From Selaginella moellendorffii (lineage: Eukaryota; Plantae; Lycopodiophyta): a DNA stretch of 64,000 bases. The translations under genes and the position numbers were made by a program. Each line of letters starts with the position of its first letter. Position 1 is the stretch's first letter. Shown one piece after another: positions 1 through 63,093 of this stretch. The DNA is taken from assembly GCF_000143415.4 (NCBI RefSeq), contig NW_003314317.1, forward strand, positions 1 through 64,000, given 5' to 3'. The notes beneath the pieces are model-generated. The model worked only from the letters and a program-made list of their open reading frames with translations. It was not told the origin of the DNA and searched no databases.

Positions 1-30
1 TACATATATGTATATATACATACATATATG

Positions 31-61
<31 letters not shown>

Positions 62-207
62 ATACATATATACATATACATATACATATATACATATATA
101 CATATATACATATATACATATATATATATACATATACATATATACATATATACATATATACATATATACATATATATATATACATATATACATACATATA
201 TATATAT
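1..207. repeat. Compound (TA)n/(TACATA)n microsatellite
   Basis: Direct reading; it explains the spurious YI/HI-repeat ORFs. Confidence 0.97.
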
Positions 208-1263
208 TTAAAATTGATGATGTTGTTATTATTAGTTAATATTTTACATGAGGAATCTTGTGGTAAAATAAAAATGTTTATTAAATATTTTATCTAGGAA
301 ATTAGTCATAAAACACCTTTTGATATATTTTAGTTGTGAACATTTAATTTTACATAAAATAGTTCATATTTAATATTTTATGTTATTATTTATTTAAAGT
401 TTAATAGTAGTGATCAATATAATTATTTAACTTTAACATATTTTATTTTAAAAAATTATTTTGAAGTGGATCACATTGAAATAAATATTTCATCCTCAAC
501 TGCAATTAAAAATATAAAAGGGATGTGGCATTATATTTTGGTAAATGGTTTCCAAGTGTGGGTACAATAGAAGTATATTCCACAACTAATAATAATTGAA
601 TATAAAAATTCAATTAAATTTTTTATTTAATTAGAATAACACTTATTTTTAAAATCTTTTAACTTTAATTGATGGTTAGAGAACTTAGTGACCATAAAAA
701 ATTGTTAATATTAAATAAGGAACATTCTAATGTTAATAGTGCCCAACTGAAAGCATGAGACTACAATAAAATAGATGTAAATTAATTTCCTTTATCACTA
801 TTATCCTTAAAACACAAGAAGTTCTCTAACTAATTTACCTTTCCTCTTAAGTTCTGCTGGGAGAACTTCTTCATGTTGAAGCATTAAGTTCCTCCAGTAT
901 TTTAAACTCTCTACAAATTCATAGATGCAAATTGGCTATAGAGGAGAGGCACTGTTGAATCTTGTGTGGGTAGTTGTGGTGGTGGCTGTTTAGATGTTTC
1001 TCCAGGTCTCTCAGCATTGAATGGGCCACTTGAAAAGGAAAGAGCTTTCTCATCGACATAAAAAAACATTGGTTTATGGAGCACGGCACGTCATTCCAAG
1101 ATCATGATGATCATGGGTCGATCATGGGTCGATCACAAACGCATGGGCGCCAGCACAGCCATCGGATCGAATCGAACGGCTAAGTCGAGGCTGCCGTTGA
1201 TTCCGTCAATTTGGAGCGGGAAAAATGCCAGTGTAGGGCTTCTATAGGCGATGCCAGGCGGCG

Positions 1264-2874
1264 ATGGCGGCCTTCCACAAGGCCATGATCTGCCGGATTT
1301 GGATCGTGCTGCTCGTCACTCTTCTCTGGATCGGCCTCTGGTACAGCAGAATCTCTCCGGCGACCTCGGATTTGGCAGCGCACAGGAAGGATCTTCACAG
1401 GTTTGGAGGAAATTTGGCCCGGAATTCGTCCTTCTCGAAGTTCTGGGAGGTGGAAGACGACCAGCTTACTGCCGATCTCATCCACGAGGTTGTGGAGGAG
1501 CTCGAGAAGATTAGGGATGGGACTCCTGGTGGTGTGGTCGCGGCTGATCGCAAGGAGCCTTGCGATGAGCGCCGGGATTTAGCAAGGGAACGGGGCTTTC
1601 GACGGATTGGAGAGACGCTTCACGCCTTTGTCCTCTCCAGTGTGGCGAGATTTTCTCTGGAAGAATTCACCGCGGTGGGATTGGTTTCTATCCAACTGAG
1701 AGGCTTTGCCGGTAATCCATTGCAGTCTTGTGCTTGGGTTCCAAAGGCTGGATCCAGTTCTGTCGCGGCTGCTCTGGCGGCTTCCAACGATTCTTCGGTG
1801 ATTTGGGGGATCTCTTGGCTGGGGTACGTGAATGAAAGCCACACGGAGAAGATCTTCTACGATGTGGGCGTGGTGAAATGCTCGTTCGAGGAGCCAGTAG
1901 GGGCAAATGGAGAAGGCGGGTTTCTAGTGCTCAACATGACAAGAAACTCATCACCGCCACCTCTTGTGGATCACTCAGGGATCATCGAGCAAAGTTACGT
2001 GCCTGTTTTTCAAGAGCTTCCGGAAGAGATCTCCTCGATCCAATTCGAAGGGCCGTTTCGATTCGACTATGCCTACTGCTCGCCTCTGCTGACACCGAGC
2101 AAGAACGTATCGGCCAAGTACGTGAAAGAGTGGCTCATGTATCACCAAGGCCTGTGGAGCGAGAGTCACGTCCACTACTTCTTCTACGACGCCGGTGGGA
2201 TCGATTCGAGGCTGCTGGAAGTCTTCCAGCCGCTGATGGAGAAGAAGTTTCTCACAGTGGTAGACATGAGAGAATTGGTACTGTTCGAGTCTGCCGGTGA
2301 CGGTCACCAGCTTGTGATCAACGATTGCCTCCAGCGAAGCCGGTTTCTAGCGACCTGGGCATTCTTCTGGGACTTGGACGAGTACCTCCAGCTCGTAAAT
2401 TCCACATCGATGGCAGCTTTGCTCAGGAGCTACGAGAGTTCTCCGTGGATATCTCTAGCAAACTTGGTGTGGAGCAGGACTTACTGCAAGGAAACGAGCG
2501 CGGAGGACGAGTGGGCCGTGGAGAGGATGCGTTTCAGGCTGCGGTACCCGACTTGCGGGGACGAGCAAAGGGCCGAGACTTGCCACGGCGTGGAGGGGCA
2601 CAGGAAGTGGATCGCCAACCCGCGCAAGGTGCTCGTCGCGTCCATCCACCGGACTGTGGAGCCCGAGTGGAACGGCGAGATCCTGCGAGCCTCCATCGCC
2701 AGGCTCAACCAGTTCCACGGCCTGGCCGCGGAGGGCAGCGCGAATTCCAGCTGCTGGATCGTGAAGAAGCTCGACCAGGTGAACGAGTCGATCCTGGTGG
2801 ACGAATGGTGGCTCAAAGACGAGAGTTTTGCAGTGGCCGCCATGGAGCAGCATCGCAAGGCCATGACCCGTTGA
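1264..2874 (+). CDS. Glycosyltransferase family 92 (GALS/DUF23-like), type II membrane protein, intronless
   Basis: 536-aa ORF with N-terminal TM; motifs FDYAYC, KEWLMYH, YFFYDAGG, QLVINDCL, FFWDLDEY (DxD) and GHRKWIANPR typical of GT92. Confidence 0.85.
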   Translation: MAAFHKAMICRIWIVLLVTLLWIGLWYSRISPATSDLAAHRKDLHRFGGNLARNSSFSKFWEVEDDQLTADLIHEVVEELEKIRDGTPGGVVAADRKEPCDERRDLARERGFRRIGETLHAFVLSSVARFSLEEFTAVGLVSIQLRGFAGNPLQSCAWVPKAGSSSVAAALAASNDSSVIWGISWLGYVNESHTEKIFYDVGVVKCSFEEPVGANGEGGFLVLNMTRNSSPPPLVDHSGIIEQSYVPVFQELPEEISSIQFEGPFRFDYAYCSPLLTPSKNVSAKYVKEWLMYHQGLWSESHVHYFFYDAGGIDSRLLEVFQPLMEKKFLTVVDMRELVLFESAGDGHQLVINDCLQRSRFLATWAFFWDLDEYLQLVNSTSMAALLRSYESSPWISLANLVWSRTYCKETSAEDEWAVERMRFRLRYPTCGDEQRAETCHGVEGHRKWIANPRKVLVASIHRTVEPEWNGEILRASIARLNQFHGLAAEGSANSSCWIVKKLDQVNESILVDEWWLKDESFAVAAMEQHRKAMTR

Positions 2875-7980: not shown

Positions 7981-9140
7981 ATGCTTCTTGCACGAGGCTT
8001 GTGCGTTTTAACAATCGCTCTTGTAGTTCTATGCGACGAGGGCCCTGCATTGAATTATTCTTACTATGCTAAGACATGTCCCCGGGCTGAATCCATTGTC
8101 AGCTCCAGCATCAGAACGTTTTTAAGGCGGGACAGGAGTGAAGTCGCGGGGCTGCTGCGAATAATTTTCCACGACTGTTTCGTTCAGGCAAGTTATTTGT
8201 TTGGTTTTCAAGTTGATTCAGGTAAATGCAAAAATCTTGCAGGGATGTGACGCGTCTGTTCTTCTCGTGGGCCTCAACGGCAAAGAGTCCGAGCAGCAGG
8301 CAGTTCCAAATCTAACTCTACGCCCAAAATCCTTGCAAGCGATCACCGACATCAAGGCACGTCTAGAAAAGGCTTGCCCCGGCACTGTCTCGTGCGCAGA
8401 TATAATCGCATTAGCCACCCGAGACGCTGTCAACCTGGTAAGCTTTCCAACGTCCTTGTTTATGCTCTTGGCTTGTAATTTCCTCTACTTAGGCTGGCGG
8501 CCCCTGGTTCCCTCTCCCCACCGGTCGCAAAGACAGCAAAAGCTTTGCAAGTGTGCAGGAGACCCTCAACAACTTGCCTCCACCGTCTTTCAACGCCTCT
8601 GAGCTGCTGGAGAGCTTCCAAAGCAAGGGGTTGAACGCTACTGATCTCGTCGCTCTGTCAGGTAAGTTTGCTCGAGAGTTTAAAAGAGCCACTCTAATGC
8701 ATTGAATCCAAACAGGTGCTCACACGGTCGGCAAAGCCCACTGCCCGACGTTCTCCGGCCGCTTGCGTCCATCGCTGGACCCCGACTTGGACATAAATTT
8801 CGCCCAAAAGCTGGCGGCGACTTGCCGGGAAGGCGACGACGACTTCGCGACCTCAAACTCCACGGATCTCGACAGCTCCACTCCAAACCGATTCGACAAC
8901 GCGTACTACAGGAACCTGTTGAGGAAGAAGGGGCTTCTCACCTCGGACCAGCAGCTGTTCGTGGACAATCGCACGAGCAGCCTGGTGGAAGCGTTCGCGT
9001 GCAGCCAGCGCTCCTTCTTCTCGCAGTTTGCGGCGTCGTTCGTCAAGCTCAGCAAGATCCAAGTGCTCACTGGGAGCGAGGGGGAGGTCCGGATCAATTG
9101 CTCCGTTGCCAATCCATCGCGAATGCTCTACGATGCTTGA
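7981..9140 (+). CDS. Class III secretory peroxidase, 4 exons
   Basis: Signal peptide; LLRIIFHDCFVQGCDASV, VSCADIIALA, ALSGAHTVG, TPNRFDNAYY, GEVRINC. Intron 1 is GC-AG (8188-8242). Confidence 0.96.
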
Positions 9141-9312: not shown

Positions 9313-9888
9313 TTAGTGGAGAGAGGTGGTGAAGGAAACAGTCTCCAGAGGGCTTCCGCAGTGGTACTGCCGGATGATATCGGCCAAAGAGAGAACAAGG
9401 CGGCTGTCCATGGGCTTCACCAAGGGATTTCTTTGCGGGACGAGCACGAAATCATACGTGTGGTTCCTCGCGCTCGAAGGACTCGGGTATGGGATGTTGT
9501 GGCTGGTGTTGGAAGGAGCAACGTAAGGCTCGAGAATGCTGGCCGTCACAGCTCCTGTGCAAAGCAGATTCAACATAGATCATGGAAGAACGTTCAAGAA
9601 CTTACCAGAGCTGCCGGCTGGAATGTTCGCAATCCAATAGTTGATGTAAGGATAGACCTTGGAGGGAGCTACCAGTGCTCGTTGGTCCGCCATCACCACC
9701 GAAAAGAGACGAGCGGTGCCATTCCCGCGGAAGCCTTGAATATCAATTGTGGGAGGTGAGTCAGTGCTGCTCAAGGGGATAAAATTGCCATTCGCCACAG
9801 TCATAGAGCCATACTGGACGAAAAGACCCACGGCGACATCCGCAAACAAACAGCACACAAGAGCAAAAGACGCCACGAAAGATGCCAT
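9313..9888 (-). CDS. Divergent secreted PEBP-fold protein, 174 aa; exons 9888-9606 and 9554-9313
   Basis: Spliced ORF is intact; N-terminal signal peptide; the order of motifs V.YG..V.NG, FSVVM.D, YINYWIANIP, HTYDFVLVPQ and Y.CGSP..V.F parallels FT/TFL1/MFT. Confidence 0.75.
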
Positions 9889-10601
9889 TGGAATTTGATG
9901 TACCTACAAGGATGGATCGCCCATCGTTTTTATACAATGCCATAATCTAAATTCGTGCCAGATTTCTAATAAAGGTTATAATCTTTGCAACTAAAATATC
10001 ATTTCGAATTATTTATTTCCAACGGCTCTCATTCTTTTAGATTAATTGTGTCAATGTGAAACATCTTTTCACTCTTAAGTATTGCATTTTCATTGTAAGT
10101 ATATTTGAAGCACTTTCACTCTAGATCTTCATCATATTTTATTGATGTTTCAGGCAAGTGTCTAGACTGAATCTCCACAAGTGTCCTGCAAGCTATCCGT
10201 GCCCAAGTAGCTCTCCCCCTCAAAGTAATCCTCGTGCCCTCCACCAAAAGTGTCCCTCCTCTTCGTCTTCTCGTCCAAGACCCTCCATCGTTCGTACCAA
10301 TCCCCTCCATGAAATCCCAAAACTCGCCTTTGATTCCTCCTACACTTCACATCTTTCCCAAGCTGGTTCATCCCTTCGTCCGTGACATCCTTGCAAACGT
10401 TCCATGACTTGCAAGTTATATCCTCCCAAGTACTCACGTCAATGGGCTTCTTGTCCAACACACATTTGTTAGTTCCAAAAACCGCTCACACTTTCCATCA
10501 CCTTTCCTAAACCCTAAACTTTCATGCACAAAAGGAGTGATTATTTCATTATTTTACCACACATACTGATCTTCGTTATTTACCATATATACAACATCTT
10601 T

Positions 10602-17031: not shown

Positions 17032-18071
17032 TTAGTAACCTTTAATGAGTGATACAAGCACAACACGGGGCGGTTCACCGGGCAACCTGCAATGCATCAC
17101 TGACAAGTTGTCAACGATCACAACGTCACCTTTTTGCCAGTCCAACACGACTTGTTCCTCTTGCAGCACCGTAGCTATCTTGTCAAGTTCTTCCACCGGG
17201 ATGGGTGATCCGTCTCCAAACGCAACTCCGCGAGTGACAGGGTCGTCTTGGACAAGGCAAATGCTGTTGAACCAAGCCATGGAGCCTTTGACCGGGTGCT
17301 TGACTGTCGCAGAGAAAGGCCCTCGATAAGCAACCGGCTCGTCATGATCGGATCCATCGGCTTTCCATTCCAGTCGAGCTCCAATCGCTTCAGCTCTATC
17401 AAAGGAATCGGAAAGTTACACACTAGCTCCCTCTCGGTATACCTCTTTTGCGCAATGGCTTTGTCCGTGGTCTGGAACGCTTCCTCCCACTTTTTTGGAA
17501 GTCCGGTGCGGTAGCAAATTCGCTTCTCCTGCAAGAGATTGAAGATCTCGGGCATCTCTTTTGCGAGCCTCTGGTACACGAGCTCGCCGTTGACGAGAGC
17601 TGTTCCTCCCCCTCTCGGCGATGGCTGCTCGCAAAAGAACATGATCACGTCCGGATAGACAGTGAGCTGTTCATGGAGAAACTCGAGCAAAATCAAGGAG
17701 TCGGATCTTTGAGAAGGCAAATAACTTACATAGGCCATCTCGTTGTGGAAGGAGATTCGCTTGTCCACGGGGTCTTCGTTGGCCGTGAACACGGGACCAA
17801 GGATGTGCTTCCTTGCACCCCCGCCGTGCTTGTAGTCCATGCTGGTGTAGCCCAGCGCCTCCACGACGCTCGCAAAATCCTGGGCATTTGCCAGCTTCCA
17901 TCCCCGGAGGAGAAGTGCGCCGTGCTCCACCACTTTTCCCCGGATCGAAGCCCTCTTTTCGCGAATCAGATGCAAGAGGCTGTGCAGGGAATCGTCGCTG
18001 CCATTGTCTGGGACGAGAAGCGCTGGGAATTCATCCATTAGAGAGCCCTTGAGGAGTGGATCAAATTTCAT
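17032..18071 (-). CDS. TauD/clavaminate synthase-like 2OG-Fe(II) dioxygenase, 3 exons
   Basis: HGALLLRG, VFTANE, FHNEMAY (HxE), FFCE, WFN, WQKGDVVIVDNLSVMHCR; frames join through GT-AG introns. Confidence 0.9.
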
Positions 18072-18354
18072 TTGACCTTTATAGTCTACAGTTGACTTAA
18101 GATTGACTTGGACCACAAGTTACACAAACTTTTTTGGGGCTCAAAACGTGCAATTTTTCACAAAGAAAAGTTGAAGAGTACTCCACATTTTGCGAAGCTT
18201 TTTTTTTTTGGGCCCAAAACATGTGATCTACGTGAAATGTCAAGGAGGTACCCCACATTTAACGCGCCACTTTTTAGGGAAGATCTCATAAAAGACAAAA
18301 GAAACAAAGAAGTATTGAACAGTGAGTTTTAATAAAGCACACCTCCTTTCTCTT

Positions 18355-21174
18355 TCACCTTTGACGCGAGCATATATAGTTTGACATCAACACATAGCTT
18401 CCAGAGCTTGTGTCCACCACTCCCAGTCCCTCCAATCTTTGCAGCGTTTGGAAACAAGTTTTTCCAATAGCATCGTTCTTCCATTTGCAGCACGCATCCA
18501 GCAAACAAATCCACAAAGGTACAACGTTTTCTCTGTCCCCGAGCTCCAGCACCATAGCCAGTGCCTCCTCCAACTTATTCGCCTGCCCAAGCAAATCCAC
18601 CATCACTCCATAGTGTTTGATACTTGGTTTCAATCCATACAGCGTCACCATCCTCTCAAAGTAGCTCTTTCCTTCCGTGACGAGACCAGCGTGATTGCAA
18701 GCGGAGAGAACACTCAAGAAAGTTATCTCGTTTGGTTCCAGCAGCTCCTGTTCTTCCAAACTCTTTAGTAAATTAAATGCACTGGCGGCATCTCCCTGGC
18801 GACTGTATCCATCCAGCATCGAGTTCCAAGTGATCAAGTCCTTCTCCTCGTCCCCAACAAGGGAAAATCTTTCTTCTGCCTCAGCAATGCTTCCACATTT
18901 GCCGTAGAAATCGATGATTGAGTTCACCACCATCAAGTTCTTGTGAAGTCCAGCGTTTCGGACCTCGGCCTCGATCTTCCTACCAGTTTCAAGAGCTCCA
19001 TAGTTTCCACAGGCCTTGAGAACTGCCGTGAAAGTTGTGGCATCAGATGATACTCCGGAAGCTCGCATTCTCGAGTAGAGATCGAGAGCTTTCTCGGCAT
19101 CACCACCCTCCGCATAGCCTCGGATGATCGAAGTCCATGCCACCACATTTGGATTGGAAATCTTTTCAAAAACTTGGCAAGCGTTCGCCAGGCTTCCACA
19201 CTTGACGTAAGTATCCACTAAGCTACTCGCTACAAAAACATGTTCTTCCAATCCATATCGTCTCGCATCCAAATGAAACTCTCCAGCTTTCTCCAAACAC
19301 ATATTTTTATCCACGAGAGATTGGTTTGCGTACAAGGCAGCACAGGCCTTTAGAGCAGCCAAGATAGTCACTGGATTTGGAGGAATTCCTTCTTCGTCGC
19401 GCATTCTATAGTAGAGCTTCAGAGCCATTTCTTCTTGTCCACACTCGGCATAACCCGTGATCATACAGTTCCAGGACACTAGATCTCGCTGTCTCATATT
19501 TTCAAACACTTTGCGAGAGTCTTCCATATCCCCAAACTTTGCGTATGTTTCTACAAGCCGGCTAGCGACAAAAACATTGCATTCCAGTCCATCCTTCCAA
19601 GCTTCACGATGGATTTCTCTCACTTTTGATTGTAGCTTGTCAGTTTCCAACTTATGGCATTCTTTGAGCTTGGAACTTAGCTCGTGATCTTTCTCATGTT
19701 CTTTGCTTAAACTCTCAGCTAGACTCACACAAGCCTTGAGCACGGCAAGGTAAGTGATAGCATCTGGTTTCCATCCCTCGTTTCTCATCATCTCAAAGAT
19801 CTTCAATCCCATTTTGCCCTCTTTACATTCACCATAGCCTGCTATAAGACAATTCCAAGAGACTGTGTCTTTGTCTACCATACAATCAAAAACTTGCTGG
19901 GCGCCCAGCATGTCCCCACACTTGGCATAAAAATCCAGCACACAATTCCCCATAACAATGTTAGATTCAATCCCATTCCTCACAACTCTTGCTAGAACAA
20001 CTTGTTTGCCATGTTGAACCTTTGCCACCTCATTATTAGCTTCTGCCAGTGCATGCAATACTGCTGAAAATGTGATTGTGTCAGCTTGAATCCCCTTGTC
20101 AAGCATTCGAGAGAAAAACTCAATCGTTCTACCTGTGTCACCTTTCTGGGCATACCCTGATATCATCCCTGTCCAAGACACCAAGTCCGGAGTCATTATT
20201 TTCTCAAACACACCATTAGCTTCTTCCATGCTTCCACACCTTGCATACATTTCCACCAGCGAGCTCGCTACAAAGGGATGATTTCCATGGCCATGTTTGA
20301 GAGCTTGAGAGTGGATCGATCGCCCCTTTCTCAAAACATCTCTAATCTTCTCTTGTTGATTTTCCATTTGATCTTTCCTTGTTACTAGAACATTCACACA
20401 AGCTTTGAGAGCAGCAACAAATGTAACATTGTTTGGATAGCATTCACTCGATTGCATCTCGTCAAAGAGATCCAAAGCAAGTTCACCATGGCCAAGCTCT
20501 GCGTACCCCTGGATCATTGCTGTCCATGAAACAACCGTGCGCTGCGTGATCCTGTCAAAAACTCGTCGAGCATCGCTCAAGCTCCCACATTTTGCATACA
20601 TATCCACCAAAGAGTTTGCCACGAAAATGTGTGTATCATCACCACTGGCTGCTGCTTGGGCATGTAGATCTCGCCCTCGTTTCAAGCTCTGTGCTTTCAC
20701 AAGCTGCGCACCAACAAGAGTTTTCTTCTCCTTGTCTGCAAGAGCAATGCAAGCACGTAGGGCAGCAAGATACGTCACGAAATTTGCTGGAATTCTGGCT
20801 TCTTCCCTCAGCTGCGAGAAGAGCTCTAAGCCAAGCTCGCCATTTTGATTCTCGGCACAAGCTTTGATGATACAATTCCAAAGGACGATTGATCTACGCT
20901 CTCGGACACTCTGGAAAACTCTGGTGGCTTCAACCAAGTTTCCACACTTGGAGTACATGTCTATTAACGTGCTTGCAACACGAACATCAAGGCTTCTCTC
21001 ACCGAACCTGGCTTCTATGCTGTGGATTTTCTTGCCGGATTCTATGTCTTGTGAAATGCTGCAAGCTTTCAATGCGGCCACCACCACTGCAACACTGGGC
21101 CGATCTCCTGTTTCCACAATCCTAATATAAGTTCTGAGTGCAGGTGGAGCACCCCTTGATGGTGGGTTTTGCAT
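18355..21174 (-). CDS. PLS-class PPR protein with partial E domain and no DYW (candidate editing factor)
   Basis: Repeated P-L-S motifs (VANSLVDMYAKCGSL, VVSWTAMIQGY, TFLSVLSAC), HYGVMVDLLGQA, YVLMSN. Confidence 0.93.
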   Translation of the reverse strand: MQNPPSRGAPPALRTYIRIVETGDRPSVAVVVAALKACSISQDIESGKKIHSIEARFGERSLDVRVASTLIDMYSKCGNLVEATRVFQSVRERRSIVLWNCIIKACAENQNGELGLELFSQLREEARIPANFVTYLAALRACIALADKEKKTLVGAQLVKAQSLKRGRDLHAQAAASGDDTHIFVANSLVDMYAKCGSLSDARRVFDRITQRTVVSWTAMIQGYAELGHGELALDLFDEMQSSECYPNNVTFVAALKACVNVLVTRKDQMENQQEKIRDVLRKGRSIHSQALKHGHGNHPFVASSLVEMYARCGSMEEANGVFEKIMTPDLVSWTGMISGYAQKGDTGRTIEFFSRMLDKGIQADTITFSAVLHALAEANNEVAKVQHGKQVVLARVVRNGIESNIVMGNCVLDFYAKCGDMLGAQQVFDCMVDKDTVSWNCLIAGYGECKEGKMGLKIFEMMRNEGWKPDAITYLAVLKACVSLAESLSKEHEKDHELSSKLKECHKLETDKLQSKVREIHREAWKDGLECNVFVASRLVETYAKFGDMEDSRKVFENMRQRDLVSWNCMITGYAECGQEEMALKLYYRMRDEEGIPPNPVTILAALKACAALYANQSLVDKNMCLEKAGEFHLDARRYGLEEHVFVASSLVDTYVKCGSLANACQVFEKISNPNVVAWTSIIRGYAEGGDAEKALDLYSRMRASGVSSDATTFTAVLKACGNYGALETGRKIEAEVRNAGLHKNLMVVNSIIDFYGKCGSIAEAEERFSLVGDEEKDLITWNSMLDGYSRQGDAASAFNLLKSLEEQELLEPNEITFLSVLSACNHAGLVTEGKSYFERMVTLYGLKPSIKHYGVMVDLLGQANKLEEALAMVLELGDRENVVPLWICLLDACCKWKNDAIGKTCFQTLQRLEGLGVVDTSSGSYVLMSNYICSRQR

Positions 21175-21715: not shown

Positions 21716-22152
21716 TTAGTGGAGCGAAGTACAGTCTGGAGAGGGCTTCCACAGTGTACTGCCGAATGATATCAGCTAAAGAGACGACAATGCAGGCTTC
21801 ACCAAAGGATTCCTCTTGCACAAAATCGTATTGTGATTCCTTGCACTGAGTGGATTCGGGTATGGAATGTTTCTGGAAGGAGCAACATGGGGCTCTAAAA
21901 TGCTGCCCTTCACTGCTCCTGCAAAGCAAATCCAAAAGTTGATGTAGCGATAAACTTTGTCTGATGCTACTAGTGGTTTTTGATTTGCCATAACCACCCA
22001 AAGGAGGCATCCTTCCCAAATCCGTGGGGGTGAGTCAGTGCTGCTTAAGAGAATGAAGTTGCCATTCCCAATGATATTGCACAAGCAAACCTACAAGAAA
22101 CTTGAGCCCACAAGCAACAGAAACACAAGCAAAACACCATTAAAGTTGCCAT
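21716..22152 (-). pseudogene. Degenerate paralog of the secreted PEBP-like gene at 9313-9888
   Basis: Shared blocks NGNF.LSSTDSPP, KVY.YIN.WI, SILEP.VAPS, SARNH and SLADIIRQY; frameshifts, and a deletion removing the intron donor. Confidence 0.85.
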
Positions 22153-23949: not shown

Positions 23950-27320
<3,371 letters not shown>

Positions 27321-29492: not shown

Positions 29493-30107
29493 AAAATTTT
29501 TGTGGAGCTTTCTAAACAGAAACCAATGTGAGGGAGAACCCTTTGATACTAGACCGTTTAAATCCCATTCTTCCTTTGGCAGCTCGGTGCTGATGTACGG
29601 AGACAGTAAAAAACGTAAGTAAAAGGATTAACTCTAGGCAAACGTACATTGAGAATGTCATCCATTGTCAATTGAGAGTAATCCATCATAAGCGGCTTTG
29701 ATAACAAAGCACGCTTACGTTCCGTGTAGACACGGTCACGTTGACTATTCAGCACCTCATCGTATTCGAACAGCTGTTTACGGGCTTCAAAATAATAGTT
29801 TTCGACTTTTCTTTGAGCCTCGTCCAGCGATTTCGTGAGCATTTTTGACTCGATTGGCAAATCCTTGATTTAGAAAGCTGTCATCAAAACCAAAATAAGA
29901 ATTTGTCAATATCTACAAAATGACAACTACCTCACCTTTATCTTTTCACCACCAAATATCCGAAATATGGTACCTTCTAGACTCAAGAAAAATCTTGATG
30001 TTCCTGGATCACCTTGCCTGCCACTGCGGCCGCTGCCTGTAAGAACCTTCTATGAGTAAAATTTTATGGAGCAAAAACAAATGTGAGGGAGAACCCTATG
30101 ATAACAG
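29493..30107. repeat. Imperfect 50-60-bp direct repeats (29493-29552 and 30058-30107) flanking the SecA fragment
   Basis: Identical core AATGTGAGGGAGAACCCT at 29525 and 30080, each preceded by AAATTTT..TGGAGC and followed by TGATA. Confidence 0.8.
29558..30040 (-). pseudogene. Internal fragment of plastid SecA (3 exon remnants)
   Basis: [60 protein letters not shown]; in-frame TAA in LMTAF*IKDLPIES; lost acceptor AG; no 5' or 3' parts. Confidence 0.9.
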
Positions 30108-31199
30108 CTAAAAATGAAAATTGCCAAATGCAGTGGACACCCTAAACCCTAAACCCCTAAGTATATTTTAGGTATATTCAATAGCAAATTAAGTAAATTA
30201 AAATTTTCATTAATAAAGTTTAGATATCTTATTTTAAATAAATTATTTTTAGTTTTAATTATTTTTAATTTTCTTAAGCAGTGAATATACCTAGAATATG
30301 CTTGGAGACTCTAGAATATTTTACCATCTAATGGTTGTTATTCATTTAGATTAATCTTATATTTATAAATTATAAACATGTTTATAATTTATAAACTTTC
30401 TTAAATCCTTTCTAATATATTCTTTGTTATTCTATCATCTAATGGTTGATATGCAATAAGATTAATCTTGTGTTTATAAATTACAAACATGCTTATAATT
30501 ATAAACTTGATTTGATCAATTGGATTAATAAGTATGAATAACACTCTTATTTTGATACAAAATGGTAAAAAATTATTTTTAACACAAATTTTTTTGTCTC
30601 ACAAATTAAATTTCTCTGATTAAGTTTGCCAAATTATTTTGATCCTTCTCACAATTTCCATTAAGAAAGGTTTTCCTCAGTTTGTTAACATTTCTTCTAT
30701 AGTATAGCTTGAGGAATAGCTTCTCAAGCTTTTGTCTCTTTCTTAACTTACATAAGTGCTCCACATTTGCAAATTTGAGCAGTGCAAGAGATTGAGATTT
30801 ATTTTTGAATCAAGTCAAATTTCTTTCCCCTTGTGTTTTTAAGTGTTTTATTATAATTGCTTCTACATTTGCCAAGCTGTTTGGATATTATGGCTTTGGT
30901 CTTCAAAATAATATTTAGTTAAAGCTAAAAAAAATTTGCATTAGGTTTTGTAAATGGCTCTTGATGCTGGGAGGACACTTCTGCTTCCCACCATATTCGA
31001 AGGTTTGCAGGTAACAAGGTTGTGCTTTTACTCAATGCTTGTTCCCACACACAGAATATAAAACAAAAGAAAGCTTGCCTTAAGAAAATAGTCTTCTATT
31101 GGGCGTGCCACAAGGGCTTTGCCAGGAAATGGCGGATTTCCACTAACAAGTTTGATGAGGTAAAACAAAACCAATGTATTTGTCATTAATTAAGTTGAT

Positions 31200-58101: not shown

Positions 58102-60078
<1,977 letters not shown>

Positions 60079-60781
60079 GAAAGAAACGCGGCCAGTTTTG
60101 TATGCGCTAGTGAAGGAGCTGACTACTTATATTTTTTCAAAGACACCACCAGTATGGATGGAAACTATGATTGTTACTGGAAATAAATCACACACACAAG
60201 ACGAACCATATGAAAATAAATCAATGCCGTGGAATGAAAAATGCCTTGCTTTCTCAATGGTTATGAAATTCAAAGAAAGATGATTGATTTGATTATAATT
60301 AAGTGGTAACTAAATTCCACAGCCATATTCTGGATAGCATTCAACTGTATTGTGACTATGAATGCTAAAGAATCTGGATGACCCAAGATCGGTCCTTGTA
60401 CAGTATAGCCTGGACATTCACATTGCTTAACAAATAGAGATCTAGCATGATTGCAATAGTTTCCTGTTAATTGGAAATGTCCTTCTAACATATATTCTAT
60501 ACCCCATGAAGCTCCAACTTCAGCTGTGAGAGAATAAAAGTATATTCACTCAAGATGCACCTTTCAAAGTGGATTGTCAAGATTGTTAAAGAAGATTACA
60601 CCTGATAGTTGTTGAAATGAAGGAGCTCAAGGAGCTGAGCTTATATTCACTACGCATCAAATGGAGTCATAATCTTAATCTCATAAGTAAAAATTAATTA
60701 GCATTCTTAATAAAAATAAGGGAGAACCAATAATTCTTTGTACATGTGTTAGAACTGTGATATAAATCGTACAAGGGATTG

Positions 60782-60952
<171 letters not shown>

Positions 60953-63093
60953 TCAGAGAAAACTAAAAGTCTAAAGTCTTAGATTAGAAATCCTTGACAG
61001 ATTTGCCAACTTACAACATGTTGGTTTGAGCAAAGTGTTTTGGCATAAAAGTTAACTATAAATAAAAGGGTTAACATAATTTTTATTTTTTAATTCACTA
61101 TCTACTATAATAATAATAATAATAACTAAAACAAGAACTTCCAAAGTGTGAGGAAAACTCTAGTGCAAACCCCAAAGTTAATGTGCTCTTCAAGGATTCA
61201 ACATTTCATTCTTTGAAATTCCTTCTTTTCTACAGGGCATACTATTAAAGAATATGGCAGTGATCTTTGAAGCCAGTGACTCTTTTGGTTGCTTCAAAAT
61301 GGCTGTGGGTGAGAACTATAATCTTTTCTTCATTTGGTTTTTATCACTTAGCCATGACTGTTTGTATTAATTCTTCCAGCTATAAATTCCATATGAAATA
61401 TGTAGCTATTGGTGCACTGGTTGGCAGGTGCAAAGGATGTGTGTGATGCTTAGAGATAGAAGCGTTTAGGTATTGCTTTAAGTCCAAGAAAGAAATATAA
61501 AGAATATTCTACAGCCTTGGAAATCTGGACATCTTGGCTGGCCTATATTCAATCTCATGTACTGGTATTTTTCTGTGGATGACAGAAGAGTGTGATATTG
61601 ATCCTAAAGAATATAGCATCAGGAATAACTACTGTAACAAGGAAAAGACACTTGATGATGACGTTGAGGAGTATATACACTAATTTATTGAAGTTTGGAG
61701 TGACATCAAGAGATAAACAATTCTTGCTTATCAAAAGATATCTTCGCATGGATCCTCAAGGTATGAATCAATCATATATTTATCATTACTACTGGTACAT
61801 TAAACATGTCAAAAACTATTGTATTGTAGAATGGAAATCATCACTATACTGTAACAACTAGGAGGTTAATAGTTGGTTAAAGTCATGGGAAACTTGTTGA
61901 TCTTGCAACCTTTAAGCAGGTTGACTTACTTAGAGTATCAAACCTAATCTAAATTCCACTTCAAATGTTTTATTTATCAAAAAGTTTGATGTAAACTAGT
62001 TATAAAAATTATGTAGGGATTTTATCTTTGGATGTGTATGCTTACAAGTTTTGCAATCTCTACCTTATTCTCATGGATATTTATAATGAGTTGCTAAAGT
62101 TGCAATGTTTTATCAAAGATTTTAGCTCCATGAATGTGCAAAAAAATGCCAAACAAGATTTTCTAGTGATGTTAATTAAAGCCCAGATATTTTTGCCATC
62201 AACTTGTCAATAAAGTAGTCAACATAATGATTATTTTTTTCTGAAATTTTTATGTAGAAGGATGTGTCATCTGTTGTAAGGCTTGGTCCATCCATGTTGA
62301 TCACCGAGAAATTGGATGCAGTCGGCCCTCCGATAGGAAAGCTGTTCTGGGCCATGCTTACGGCCCAGATCTTGTTGTTTCCCTAGTTGTCAGCTTTCAG
62401 TGGTGGCTACTTCTTGGCCTGTGCTCCGTGATTGTGCTGCTTTCAGTAAGGCTAGAGCTCGCTTCTGCTTCTGGAGCTTTTGCAAGGGTTTCTACATCGT
62501 CCAGTTTGGCATGAAGTTTGAGAAAGGCCTCATCTAGTGTGTGTCCAAGGGGGTCCTCCTCGGTCTTTTTCTGTCTCTTTGCTTTGCTGGCTGGGCTGGA
62601 CGCCTACAGTCTTGTTTCTGCCTCTGATGGCTGTGCTTTTCAATGTGGTCGTGGCGTGTGCTCTGCTGCCGTGGATGATTCGTTGATGTTCCACAAGCGC
62701 CAATTGCTGGTGAAAGTCTTCGAGATGTTTAGATACTGCGGTGCATAAGTGTACTTGCCCATGGTGGTCTAGCTCTTTGTCGAACTTCAACTGTTACCAC
62801 CACGGACCTGGTGTTTGTGGAGATGATTCGTCCTAAGTTGCAGAGTTTTGCTGTTTCGACATCCAGATTGCTCTCATTTGCCAAGAACTCACTATTTAGA
62901 GCTGTATTGCGGAGGGATTGTGGATGTGGAACTCGTCTCTCGTGGTCTCATTTCCTCTCGATTGAATCGTCTGGAAATGTTCTCTCTATAAATCCCGTGT
63001 AGTGACGTGTGGCCACCTGGCAATGGAAGATACTTTGAATATGCTTTCTTATTTTGCTGCCTCGATGCCGCGTCTGCTGGCTAGGTTTTGGCG

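What the first reader, a model, noticed from the sequence alone, without database searches (positions are those of the whole stretch)
9313..9888. Secreted, likely glycosylated PEBP (florigen-fold) protein with a rewritten pocket
Seen: 174 aa with a signal peptide of about 21 aa and three N-glycosylation sequons (NGT, NTS, NHT). By eye it aligns with FT/TFL1/MFT: YTLVMVDPD becomes FSVVMADQR, YLHWLVTDIP becomes YINYWIANIP, and GIHR.VF.LF.Q becomes RNHTYDFVLVPQ. Its single phase-1 intron falls in a Gly codon just after the IP motif, about where FT-family intron 3 sits. Established: plant FT/TFL1/MFT are intracellular and keep DPDxP, His and GxHR; some non-plant PEBPs are secreted or act as protease inhibitors. 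Inference: an extracellular PEBP offshoot with an altered ligand pocket, outside the three classical plant clades.
Basis: partly seen in the sequence, partly recalled or inferred. Interest (0 to 1): 0.75.

Follow-up and report, generated by a model that had tools for sequence, protein, structure and literature searches.

The report
Secreted-type divergent PEBP gene, spikemoss
This spikemoss gene is real and spliced, and it encodes a protein with the fold of the flowering hormone FT that has gained an export-type leader and sugar-attachment sites and lost most of FT's pocket motifs; it belongs to a lycophyte-only gene family of unknown function.

Summary
A two-exon minus-strand gene (9888..9606, 9554..9313) with a 51-nt phase-1 GT..AG intron in a Gly codon encodes 174 aa. 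The motifs and three sequons are as described. An RNA contig shows the exact splice.

Pfam's PEBP model misses this protein and its close paralogs, but homology is secure:
- Each exon peptide scores 42-44 bits against a profile of Pfam-positive relatives; 400 shuffles reach at most 6.7 bits.
- Profile-profile probability is 99.4%.
- The paralog profile hits rice Hd3a and FT in the PDB.
- An AlphaFold model of the closest paralog (pLDDT 78.5) matches only PEBP structures, FT/Hd3a/TFL1 first.

An exhaustive search of 1.84 billion proteins finds relatives only in Selaginella and the clubmoss Diphasiastrum. All complete models carry hydrophobic leaders. The clubmoss protein keeps the classical pocket, so the pocket loss happened within this clade.

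The window gene is under purifying selection (dN/dS about 0.08-0.17), and a decayed copy lies 12 kb away.

Secretion, glycosylation and function are inferred, not shown. Placement relative to MFT-like proteins could not be tested.

This scan already noted the same family on other DNA of this genome (s1-420264, s1-398904). Published PEBP phylogenies list only MFT-like proteins for lycophytes.

The parts
9606..9888 (-). Exon 1 (ATG at 9888; 94 codons plus the first base of Gly95).
   Evidence: An RNA contig covers 9843..9605 and joins to 9553.
9826..9888 (-). Predicted signal-peptide coding part (residues 1-21; predicted cleavage after A-V-G).
   Evidence: Hydropathy and the -3/-1 rule. The leaders of the paralogs are variable but always hydrophobic. 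Low pLDDT in the model. Inference; no dedicated predictor was run.
9555..9605 (-). Intron: 51 nt, GT..AG, phase 1, inside the Gly95 codon.
   Evidence: Same position and phase in P0001, P0002 and P0014.
9313..9554 (-). Exon 2 (last two bases of Gly95, 79 codons, TAA at 9315..9313).
9679..9705 (-). FSVVMADQR, the counterpart of YTLVMVDPD. The first Asp is kept; the Pro and the second Asp are lost.
9619..9648 (-). YINYWIANIP, the counterpart of YLHWLVTDIP. The pocket His is replaced by Asn.
9433..9468 (-). RNHTYDFVLVPQ, the counterpart of GIHRxVFxLFxQ. His and Tyr are kept, Gly and Arg are lost, and the stretch overlaps the NHT sequon.
9715..9723 (-). N-glycosylation sequon NGT (residues 56-58).
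   Evidence: It is NGT or NGS in all subfamily-A paralogs.
9502..9510 (-). N-glycosylation sequon NTS (residues 110-112), inside the 10-residue insertion that subfamily A carries relative to the Pfam-positive relatives (subfamilies C and D); subfamily B has a shorter extra stretch at the same place.
   Evidence: The loop has low pLDDT.
9457..9465 (-). N-glycosylation sequon NHT (residues 125-127), at the GxHR position. A sequon is also present here in subfamily B (NNS).
9928..9934 (-). TATAAAA, 40-46 nt upstream of the ATG; a possible TATA box.
   Evidence: Read from the sequence. A consensus match only.
21716..22152 (-). Decayed paralog (pseudogene) of the same family, about 12 kb away. About a dozen deletions, most of them frame-breaking, including loss of the end of exon 1 and the 5' part of the intron.

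Best explanation
Window 9888..9313 (minus strand) is an intact, transcribed, correctly spliced gene of Selaginella moellendorffii.

Its 174-aa product is a strongly diverged member of the eukaryote-type PEBP superfamily, the fold of FT, TFL1, MFT and RKIP. In it, the first ~25 residues of cytosolic PEBPs are replaced by a cleavable-type signal peptide.

It belongs to a multi-copy family that evolves by gene birth and death. The family has been found only in lycophytes: Selaginella subfamilies A, B and C, plus a Diphasiastrum protein that still has the classical pocket.

In subfamily A, to which the window gene belongs, the anion-binding pocket has been rebuilt:
- DPDxP has become ADQRA.
- The pocket His has become Asn.
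- GxHR has become RNHT, which creates a sequon.
- A 10-residue sequon-bearing insertion sits in the loop that lines the pocket.

Inferred mechanism: the protein enters the ER, is N-glycosylated, and is delivered to the apoplast or cell wall (less likely the vacuole). There it cannot act like FT, because no 14-3-3 or FD partners are present. It probably no longer binds phosphoryl ligands in the classical way.

The most likely role is an extracellular binding or inhibitor protein, for example of secreted proteases as with yeast Tfs1 and mammalian PEBP1, possibly in defence.

Shown here: gene structure, transcription, homology, fold (on the closest paralog), motif changes, family distribution and purifying selection. 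Inferred: secretion, glycosylation, loss of anion binding and any biochemical activity.
For: Gene and transcript:
- Structure; the spliced RNA contig is.
- The few stranded raw RNA reads lie in the orientation opposite to those of the plus-strand peroxidase gene.

Homology:
- The exon 1 and exon 2 peptides score 43.9 and 41.9 bits against an HMM of Pfam-positive relatives. The best of 400 shuffled controls scores 6.7 bits.
- hhalign of subfamily A against the Pfam-positive relatives gives probability 99.4%, E 1.7e-21, over 145 columns.
- The exhaustive profile search hits P0007 (E 1.9e-13), P0010, P0011 and P0012. These pass Pfam PF01161's gathering score with 33.3, 26.3, 33.9 and 52 bits against a cut-off of 24.
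- The subfamily-A profile alone hits Hd3a at E 8e-4 and FT at 4.8e-3 in PDB. The wider profile hits Hd3a at 3.9e-22.

Fold:
- The AlphaFold2 model of paralog P0001 has pLDDT 78.5 and pTM 0.76. P0001 is 83.5% identical to the window protein in exon 1 and 93.6% in exon 2.
- All 49 Foldseek PDB hits at E<=0.001 are PEBPs, with Hd3a, FT and TFL1 first (TM 0.66-0.73).
- The best ESM Atlas cluster is 'Terminal flower 1': TM 0.70, 141 residues, rmsd 2.5 A.
- All 30 nearest clusters by language-model features carry PF01161.

Leader and secretory features:
- Hydropathy and the -3/-1 rule.
- Leaders are present in all four subfamilies.
- P0007 has an extensin-like run of Ser followed by five Pro after its leader.
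- Sequons are conserved, and the one at the GxHR position is shared by subfamilies A and B.

Selection:
- Against the closest paralog, pN/pS is 0.078/0.364 in exon 1 and 0.028/0.287 in exon 2.
- My Jukes-Cantor correction gives dN/dS of about 0.17 and 0.08.

Family dynamics: tandem copies, fragments and a pseudogene.
Against: - Pfam PF01161 matches neither the exon peptides nor the full-length close paralogs P0001 and P0002.
- No signal-peptide predictor was available. The leader has no positively charged n-region and carries an Asp at position 17.
- The mature protein has a single Cys, so no disulfide pair of the kind that would favour an extracellular life.
- Expression is low in every sample read: depth 1-2 reads, or 7.9 for the contig, against 100-1200 for the neighbouring peroxidase.
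- The fold model is of a paralog, not of the window protein itself. Its alignment contained classical PEBPs, and with five close paralogs only the model failed (pLDDT 39.9).
- No protein-level or localisation data exist, and no biochemical activity is known for any member.
Confidence: 0.72

Rival explanations
1. The hydrophobic N-terminus is not a cleaved signal peptide. It is instead a signal anchor or an organelle-targeting sequence, so the PEBP domain is membrane-tethered or organellar and not released outside the cell.
For: If the Asp at position 17 is ignored, hydrophobic residues run from 4 to about 24. There is no positively charged n-region. No dedicated predictor was run.
Against: - Residues 22-29 (LFVQYGS) align with the first conserved strand of PEBPs (LKVTYG in Hd3a) and are modelled as a strand with high confidence. 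The free hydrophobic core is therefore only about 13 residues, which is signal-peptide length.
- Small residues occupy -3 and -1.
- P0010's leader is a textbook signal peptide with basic residues at its start.
- The leader has no Ser/Thr/Arg-rich composition typical of a transit peptide.
Confidence: 0.1
2. The gene is a drifting, functionless duplicate of a lineage-specific family, on its way to becoming a pseudogene like the copy at 22152..21716.
For: Expression is very low. A decayed copy lies in the same window and a fragment in L001. The classical functional motifs are lost.
Against: - The reading frame is intact, the splice sites are canonical and the transcript is correctly spliced.
- pN is far below pS against every intact paralog.
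- The altered motifs and the sequons are themselves conserved across subfamily A.
Confidence: 0.06
3. The clade did not arise from the plant MFT-like lineage. It is either an old separate eukaryotic PEBP lineage or was acquired horizontally, for example from an animal or a fungus in which secreted PEBPs are common. This concerns origin only and is compatible with the best explanation for what the protein is.
For: - RefSeq names subfamily-C members after nematode secreted PEBPs ('26 kDa secreted antigen-like', 'protein D2').
- P0007's best PDB matches are rat PEBP1 (47 bits), ahead of TFL1 (28.9 bits).
- The nearest language-model clusters are fungal PEBP-like proteins.
Against: - P0012 and the family profiles match the plant proteins Hd3a, TFL1 and FT best.
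- The best structural matches are plant proteins.
- Subfamilies A, B and D have a spliceosomal phase-1 intron in the loop where plant FT-family intron 3 lies.
- The clade is present in two lycophyte orders.
Confidence: 0.1

Closest known systems
Plant eukaryote-type PEBPs: FT / Hd3a, TFL1 / CEN, MFT
   Same: - Same fold: best PDB and Atlas structural matches, TM about 0.7.
- Best sequence-profile matches.
- Shared N-terminal strand motif (V-x-Y-G-x-x-x-V-x-N-G), the IP motif, the H-x-Y-x-F-x-L-x-x-Q core and the C-terminal G-x-P-V/L...F motif.
- A phase-1 intron in the loop after the IP motif.
   Different: - A hydrophobic leader replaces the cytosolic N-terminus.
- The DPDxP motif, the pocket His, and the Gly and Arg of GxHR are lost.
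- A 10-residue insertion lies before the GxHR position.
- Three sequons are present.
- There are two exons instead of the four-exon layout with 62-bp and 41-bp middle exons (PMC6514984).
- Pfam PF01161 does not reach threshold.
- Published phylogenies list only MFT-like PEBPs for lycophytes (PMC8408984).
Leader-bearing lycophyte PEBPs with a more classical pocket: Diphasiastrum complanatum P0012/P0021 and Selaginella subfamily C (P0007, P0010, P0011)
   Same: - They are the only proteins recovered by the exhaustive family-profile search.
- All have N-terminal hydrophobic leaders.
- They share the LEPY / LExY and Y-x-F-x-L-x-x-Q motifs.
- hhalign probability is 99.4%.
   Different: - They pass Pfam PF01161.
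- P0012 keeps D-x-D, the pocket His and GIHR.
- Subfamily C keeps the pocket His, lacks the 10-residue insertion and the sequons, has two Cys (one of them C-terminal), and has no intron within the PEBP domain.
Secreted animal PEBPs, e.g. Toxocara canis TES-26 and the Onchocerca D1/D2-type antigens
   Same: A PEBP domain behind a signal peptide that is exported from the cell. TES-26 is handled as a signal-peptide-bearing secreted antigen in PMC8398310, which cites Gems et al. 1995 for its PEBP homology. RefSeq's automatic names for subfamily C come from these proteins.
   Different: They are animal proteins with other added domains. From my own knowledge they keep the classical PEBP signature. 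No specific relationship was shown here.
Yeast Tfs1 (carboxypeptidase Y inhibitor) and mammalian PEBP1/RKIP
   Same: Same fold: 1wpx_B has E 2.8e-6 and rat and bovine PEBP1 have E about 5e-9. They are the precedent for a PEBP acting as a protease inhibitor or protein-binding regulator, which is the functional guess made here.
   Different: They are cytosolic, lack a leader and keep the classical pocket. Inhibitor activity for the Selaginella protein is pure inference.
Bacterial YbhB/YbcL-type PEBPs (YbcL is [11 protein letters not shown])
   Same: The general PEBP fold, and an exported member exists.
   Different: They are much weaker matches. 1fux_A (YbcL) has Foldseek E 5e-3 and TM 0.48, and nothing of this type appears in the profile search of PDB at E<=0.01. 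The Selaginella family is of the eukaryotic type.

Membership tests
PEBP superfamily (Pfam PF01161 PBP) | A match to the Pfam PF01161 profile above the gathering score. | tested here: not met
   There is no hit for either exon peptide or for the full-length close paralogs P0001 and P0002, even at E<=10. More distant family members do pass, with 26-52 bits against a cut-off of 24.
PEBP superfamily (Pfam PF01161 PBP) | Demonstrable homology to accepted members. | tested here: met
   - The window's exon peptides score 43.9 and 41.9 bits against an HMM of Pfam-positive relatives; shuffles reach at most 6.7 bits.
- hhalign probability is 99.4%, E 1.7e-21.
- The exhaustive search links subfamily A to P0007 at E 1.9e-13.
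- The subfamily-A profile hits Hd3a at E 8e-4.
PEBP superfamily (Pfam PF01161 PBP) | The PEBP fold: a central beta sheet core with a C-terminal helix. | tested here: met
   Tested on the closest paralog P0001, not on the joined window protein. The model has pLDDT 78.5. All 49 PDB hits at E<=0.001 are PEBPs. The Atlas TFL1 cluster matches at TM 0.70.
Classical PEBP signature (anion-binding pocket) | The D-P-D-x-P motif. | tested here: not met
   The window protein has A-D-Q-R-A; only the first Asp is retained.
Classical PEBP signature (anion-binding pocket) | The pocket His in Y-L-H-W. | tested here: not met
   The window protein has Y-I-N-Y-W, with His replaced by Asn. The His is kept in subfamilies C and D.
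Classical PEBP signature (anion-binding pocket) | The G-x-H-R motif. | tested here: not met
   The window protein has R-N-H-T. The His is kept, while the Gly and Arg are lost.
Plant FT/TFL1/MFT clades | Cytosolic, with no signal peptide, and the four-exon gene layout with 62-bp and 41-bp middle exons. | tested here: not met
   A hydrophobic leader is present. The gene has two exons; only an intron resembling FT-family intron 3 is present. The FT layout is taken from PMC6514984.
Plant FT/TFL1/MFT clades | Phylogenetic placement inside one of the three clades. | not tested
The indirect evidence is that the family profile recovers no classical plant PEBP at E<=1e-3.
Secreted N-glycoproteins | A cleavable N-terminal signal peptide. 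| tested here: inconclusive
   The heuristic features fit: an h-region of about 13 residues, A-x-G at -3/-1, and variable leaders in all paralogs. No dedicated predictor or experiment was available.
Secreted N-glycoproteins | Occupied N-x-S/T sequons. | not testable with these tools
   Three sequons are present and conserved within subfamily A. Whether they are occupied needs protein work.

The most novel reading that the evidence does not exclude
Early in their history, lycophytes turned the florigen/RKIP fold into an extracellular glycoprotein family. In it, a glycan and a new loop replace the phosphate-binding pocket. The family would act outside the cell either as an apoplastic inhibitor of secreted proteases in defence or as a secreted signalling ligand. 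That would make it the first plant PEBP lineage working in the cell wall space and not inside cells.
Probability: 0.15. Interest if true: 0.8.

Novelty: new variant of a known kind. Interest (0 to 1): 0.55.

Why it matters
Plant PEBPs are studied almost entirely as intracellular regulators: FT as florigen, TFL1 and MFT. The published family history gives lycophytes only MFT-like genes (PMC8408984).

A second, leader-bearing and pocket-remodelled clade present in both Selaginella and Diphasiastrum would add an unrecognised branch to that history. It would also show that the PEBP fold was re-used in the secretory pathway of a land plant, as it was in nematodes and bacteria.

The series from the clubmoss protein (classical pocket) through Selaginella subfamily C (half-changed) to subfamilies A and B (rebuilt, with a sequon at the pocket) is a natural experiment. 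It shows which PEBP residues matter once phospho-ligand binding is no longer needed.

The practical value is modest until a function is found.

Tried and rejected
- Pfam on the two exon peptides and on the full-length paralogs found no PEBP hit. One sub-threshold CLLAC match lay in a leader and I ignored it.
- phmmer of P0001 against PDB gave only a non-significant TFL1 hit (E 0.54).
- AlphaFold2 with five close paralogs failed (pLDDT 39.9). It worked only after distant relatives were added.
- Word-based homolog searches reached only the Selaginella paralogs. For P0012 they reached only one metagenomic PEBP.
- The small tree I could build shows subfamilies A+B as a 100/100 clade on a long stem next to subfamily C. 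It has no proper outgroup and weak backbone support.
- Literature searches for the SELMODRAFT ids of the family found nothing. Searches for secreted PEBPs in Selaginella found nothing relevant.
- I considered bacterial YbhB/YbcL-type ancestry and rejected it on weak scores.
- I considered a longer N-terminus from an upstream start and rejected it because of the in-frame stop six codons upstream.
- An LTP-like partner gene, as in the tandem units of L002, is not present in the window.
The exons were searched apart by reference, and the full-length analyses used the annotated paralog P0001.
Full report
**What is in the sequence**

The finding lies on the minus strand.
- Exon 1 runs 9888..9606, starting at an ATG that is preceded by an in-frame TAG six codons upstream.
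- A 51-nt intron (9605..9555, GTAAGT...GCACAG) interrupts a Gly codon in phase 1.
- Exon 2 runs 9554..9313 and ends in TAA.
- The two exons add up to 525 nt, which is 174 codons plus stop.

The three sequons are at residues 56 (NGT), 110 (NTS) and 125 (NHT).

The genome is Selaginella moellendorffii. Its very short introns fit the 51-nt intron. The upstream neighbour on the plus strand is a class III peroxidase gene ending at 9140.

**Is it a real gene?**

Yes, on three counts.
- A contig of run X1 covers 9843..9605 and continues at 9553..9511, skipping exactly the predicted 51 nt. The same run assembles the neighbouring peroxidase without its introns, so the run is RNA.
- In three stranded RNA-seq runs a few reads lie on the gene, in the orientation opposite to the peroxidase reads. 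This fits minus-strand transcription. Depth is only 1-2 against 100-200 for the peroxidase, so expression in those samples is low.
- Against the closest paralog (L001, protein P0001), the proportions of non-synonymous and synonymous differences are 0.078/0.364 in exon 1 and 0.028/0.287 in exon 2. After my Jukes-Cantor correction this is a dN/dS of about 0.17 and 0.08, which is clear purifying selection. The other intact paralogs give the same picture.

**Handling of the spliced model**

The two exon peptides were searched apart by reference. Whole-protein analyses used the annotated paralog P0001 (177 aa), which is 83.5% identical in exon 1 and 93.6% in exon 2.

**Is it a PEBP?**

Pfam says no. 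PF01161 matches neither exon peptide nor the full-length paralogs P0001 and P0002, even at E<=10. A plain phmmer run against PDB gives only TFL1 at E 0.54. Homology nevertheless holds by several independent routes.

1. A profile of the five closest paralogs, searched exhaustively against 1.84 billion representative proteins, returns only ten proteins at E<=0.001.
   - Four of them pass Pfam's PEBP gathering score of 24 bits: P0007 (33.3), P0010 (26.3), P0011 (33.9) and P0012 (52).
   - Their E-values in the search were 1.9e-13 for P0007, 1.8e-10 for P0010, 5.7e-9 for P0011 and 1.1e-4 for P0012.
2. An HMM built only from those Pfam-positive relatives scores the window's own exon 1 peptide at 43.9 bits and its exon 2 peptide at 41.9 bits. 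The best of 400 shuffled controls scores 6.7 bits.
3. Profile against profile (hhalign) gives 99.4% probability and E 1.7e-21 over 145 columns, which is the whole mature domain.
4. The subfamily profile alone finds rice Hd3a (E 8e-4) and Arabidopsis FT (4.8e-3, 8.9e-3) as its top PDB hits. The wider family profile finds Hd3a at 3.9e-22, TFL1 at 1.3e-20 and FT at 7.8e-20, followed by insect and mammalian PEBPs and mitoribosomal mL38.
5. All 30 nearest ESM Atlas clusters by language-model features carry PF01161.

**Fold**

- With only five close paralogs AlphaFold2 failed (pLDDT 39.9).
- With a 12-sequence alignment spanning the family, the P0001 model reaches pLDDT 78.5 and pTM 0.76. Low confidence is confined to the leader and to residues 111-128.
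- Foldseek against PDB gives 49 hits at E<=0.001, every one a PEBP-fold protein. Hd3a, FT and TFL1 are on top (E about 1e-9, TM 0.66-0.73). Yeast carboxypeptidase Y inhibitor and bacterial YbcL fall far lower.
- The ESM Atlas shape search returns a 'Terminal flower 1' cluster at TM 0.70 with 141 residues at 2.5 A, covering residues 22-177.

**The family**

All hits of the exhaustive search are lycophyte proteins. Four groups appear.

| Group | Members | Pocket motifs and other features |
|---|---|---|
| A (Selaginella) | Window gene, P0001-P0005 | VMADQ[RK]A, YIN[YF]W, NHTYDF |
| B (Selaginella) | P0006, P0008, P0009, P0014 | VMFTWLD, YITYW, NNSYSF |
| C (Selaginella) | P0007, P0010, P0011, P0013, P0016-P0020, P0022 | [IM][LI]DR[RQ]ASR, Y[IV]HYW, H-x-YEF. 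RefSeq's automatic names are '26 kDa secreted antigen-like', 'protein D2' and 'FLOWERING LOCUS T-like' |
| D (Diphasiastrum complanatum) | P0012, P0021 | Near-classical pocket: VDLD...P, YVHWLV, GIHRYVF |

All complete models start with a hydrophobic leader. In a small tree, A and B form a 100/100 clade on a long stem next to C. That tree has no proper outgroup and a weak backbone.

The pocket loss is therefore stepwise inside a leader-bearing clade, which is stronger evidence than the window gene alone.

The family evolves by birth and death:
- Locus L002 carries three tandem copies.
- Locus L001 carries one intact gene plus a fragment.
- The window itself holds a decayed copy at 22152..21716. 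Relative to the intact gene it has about a dozen deletions, most of them frame-breaking, including loss of the end of exon 1 and the intron's 5' part.

**The pocket**

The following comes from the alignments.
- The first Asp of DPDxP is kept (A-D-Q-R-A), but the Pro and the second Asp are gone.
- The pocket His of YLHW is Asn.
- In GxHR the His, and the following Tyr, are kept, while Gly is Arg and Arg is Thr.
- Ten extra residues carrying the NTS sequon are inserted in the loop just before this motif. In canonical PEBPs that loop forms a wall of the anion site.
- The Asn-x-Thr created at the GxHR position is matched by Asn-x-Ser in subfamily B, although the middle residue differs. This suggests the sequon itself is retained.

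'Rewritten pocket' is an accurate description at the sequence level. What it does to ligand binding is inference.

**The intron**

- Subfamily A (window, P0001, P0002) and subfamily B (P0014) share the phase-1 intron in the Gly codon right after ANIPAGS[SF].
- The Diphasiastrum gene has a phase-1 intron in the same loop. It has seven residues between the IP motif and the split codon, the same spacing that I count for FT's Gly102.
- The FT count comes from memory of FT's sequence and its 201/62/41/224-nt exons. Only the 62-bp and 41-bp exon sizes are cited, from PMC6514984.
- In the window protein only three residues separate the IP motif from the split codon, so it sits four residues closer to IP in a loop of variable length.
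- Subfamily C has no intron within the PEBP domain.

Strict positional identity cannot be claimed for the window gene.

**Secretion**

This is the weakest link because no predictor was available. Several points favour it.
- The leader has an uncharged hydrophobic core of about 13 residues, with small residues at -3 and -1.
- The leader is the most variable part among paralogs, while the mature part is conserved.
- The leader ends exactly where the first conserved PEBP strand begins.
- Leaders occur in all four groups.
- P0010's leader is textbook, with basic residues at its start.
- P0007 has an extensin-like Ser-Pro5 run after its leader. From general knowledge, such motifs mark secretory-pathway cell-wall proteins.
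- The sequons are conserved.

Three points count against it: there is no basic n-region, an Asp sits at position 17, and the mature protein has a single Cys.

I put cleaved-signal secretory targeting at roughly 0.8. The final destination (apoplast, cell wall or vacuole) is open.

**How it most likely works**

- *Shown:* the gene structure, the transcript, PEBP homology and fold, the changed motifs, the lycophyte-only distribution and purifying selection.
- *Inferred:*
  - The product enters the ER, is N-glycosylated and leaves the cell.
  - There it cannot use FT's 14-3-3/FD route, and it probably does not bind phosphoryl groups as classical PEBPs do.
  - The precedents are PEBPs that bind and inhibit proteases (yeast Tfs1 with carboxypeptidase Y, entry 1wpx; mammalian PEBP1 against serine proteases, from my own knowledge). 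The family's tandem, fast-turnover genomics also points the same way.
  - My best functional guess is therefore an extracellular binding or inhibitor protein, possibly defence-related. I hold that specific guess at only about 0.25.

**Origin**

Placement inside eukaryotic PEBPs is unresolved.
- *Towards plants:* P0012 and the family profiles match the plant proteins best, and so does the fold.
- *Away from plants:* P0007 matches rat PEBP1 best, and RefSeq names come from nematode antigens.
- *Most economical reading:* an early lycophyte duplication of the MFT-like gene that gained a leader.

**Novelty**

- UniRef labels the paralogs 'PEBP-like protein', and RefSeq names subfamily C automatically.
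- No paper in the library mentions these genes.
- The broad PEBP phylogeny of PMC8408984 states that lycophytes possess only MFT-like proteins.
- Secreted PEBPs are known in nematodes (TES-26; PMC8398310) and bacteria (YbcL, entry 1fux).
- This scan already reported the same family on other DNA of this genome, with the same reading (s1-420264, s1-398904). I confirmed part of that independently, namely the tandem cluster in L002.

I class the finding as a new variant of a known kind.

Noticed in passing
window 21716-22152 (minus strand): A decayed copy of the same PEBP-like gene lies about 12 kb from the intact one. It has about a dozen deletions, most of them frame-breaking, and has lost the exon 1 / intron junction.
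   Followed up: yes
window about 8300-9140 (plus strand): A class III peroxidase gene (Pfam PF00141) is strongly expressed, at depth 100-240. Two competing junction forms are seen at 8434/8436 to 8491/8492, one of them with an extra G. Three positions (8383, 8922, 9000) have the other letter in about half or more of the reads, probably from a second haplotype or allele. Its 3' end converges on the PEBP-like gene within about 170 nt.
   Followed up: partly
L002:10001-17779 (GL377586.1): A tandem unit is repeated three times. Each unit has an LTP-like ORF (starting at 10001, 12895 and 16598) about 300 bp upstream of a PEBP-like copy (starting at 10586, 13519 and 17204). The annotated 257-aa protein P0003 fuses the two. 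No LTP-like sequence accompanies the window gene.
   Followed up: partly
L001:6232-6600 (GL377582.1): A fragmentary PEBP-like copy with a stop lies 3.4 kb upstream of the intact P0001 gene. It sits next to an LTP_2 gene.
   Followed up: no
window 1-1000, 30001-31000, 60001-62000: These are very AT-rich stretches (GC 0.22-0.33) in a window that is otherwise 43-58% GC. I did not examine them.
   Followed up: no
window 18355-21174 (minus), 17175-18116 (minus), 1264-2874 (plus), 23950-24594 (plus): Long ORFs with Pfam matches: a PPR protein (939 aa), a TauD/TfdA-type dioxygenase, a GT92 glycosyltransferase, and the start of a protein kinase domain. These are ordinary neighbours. PPR genes also flank the paralogs in L001 and L003.
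   Followed up: no
P0014 (SELMODRAFT_422988), subfamily B: UniRef calls this 175-aa PEBP-like protein 'Neprosin domain-containing protein'. That name does not fit its sequence or its alignment with the family and is probably an annotation carry-over.
   Followed up: no
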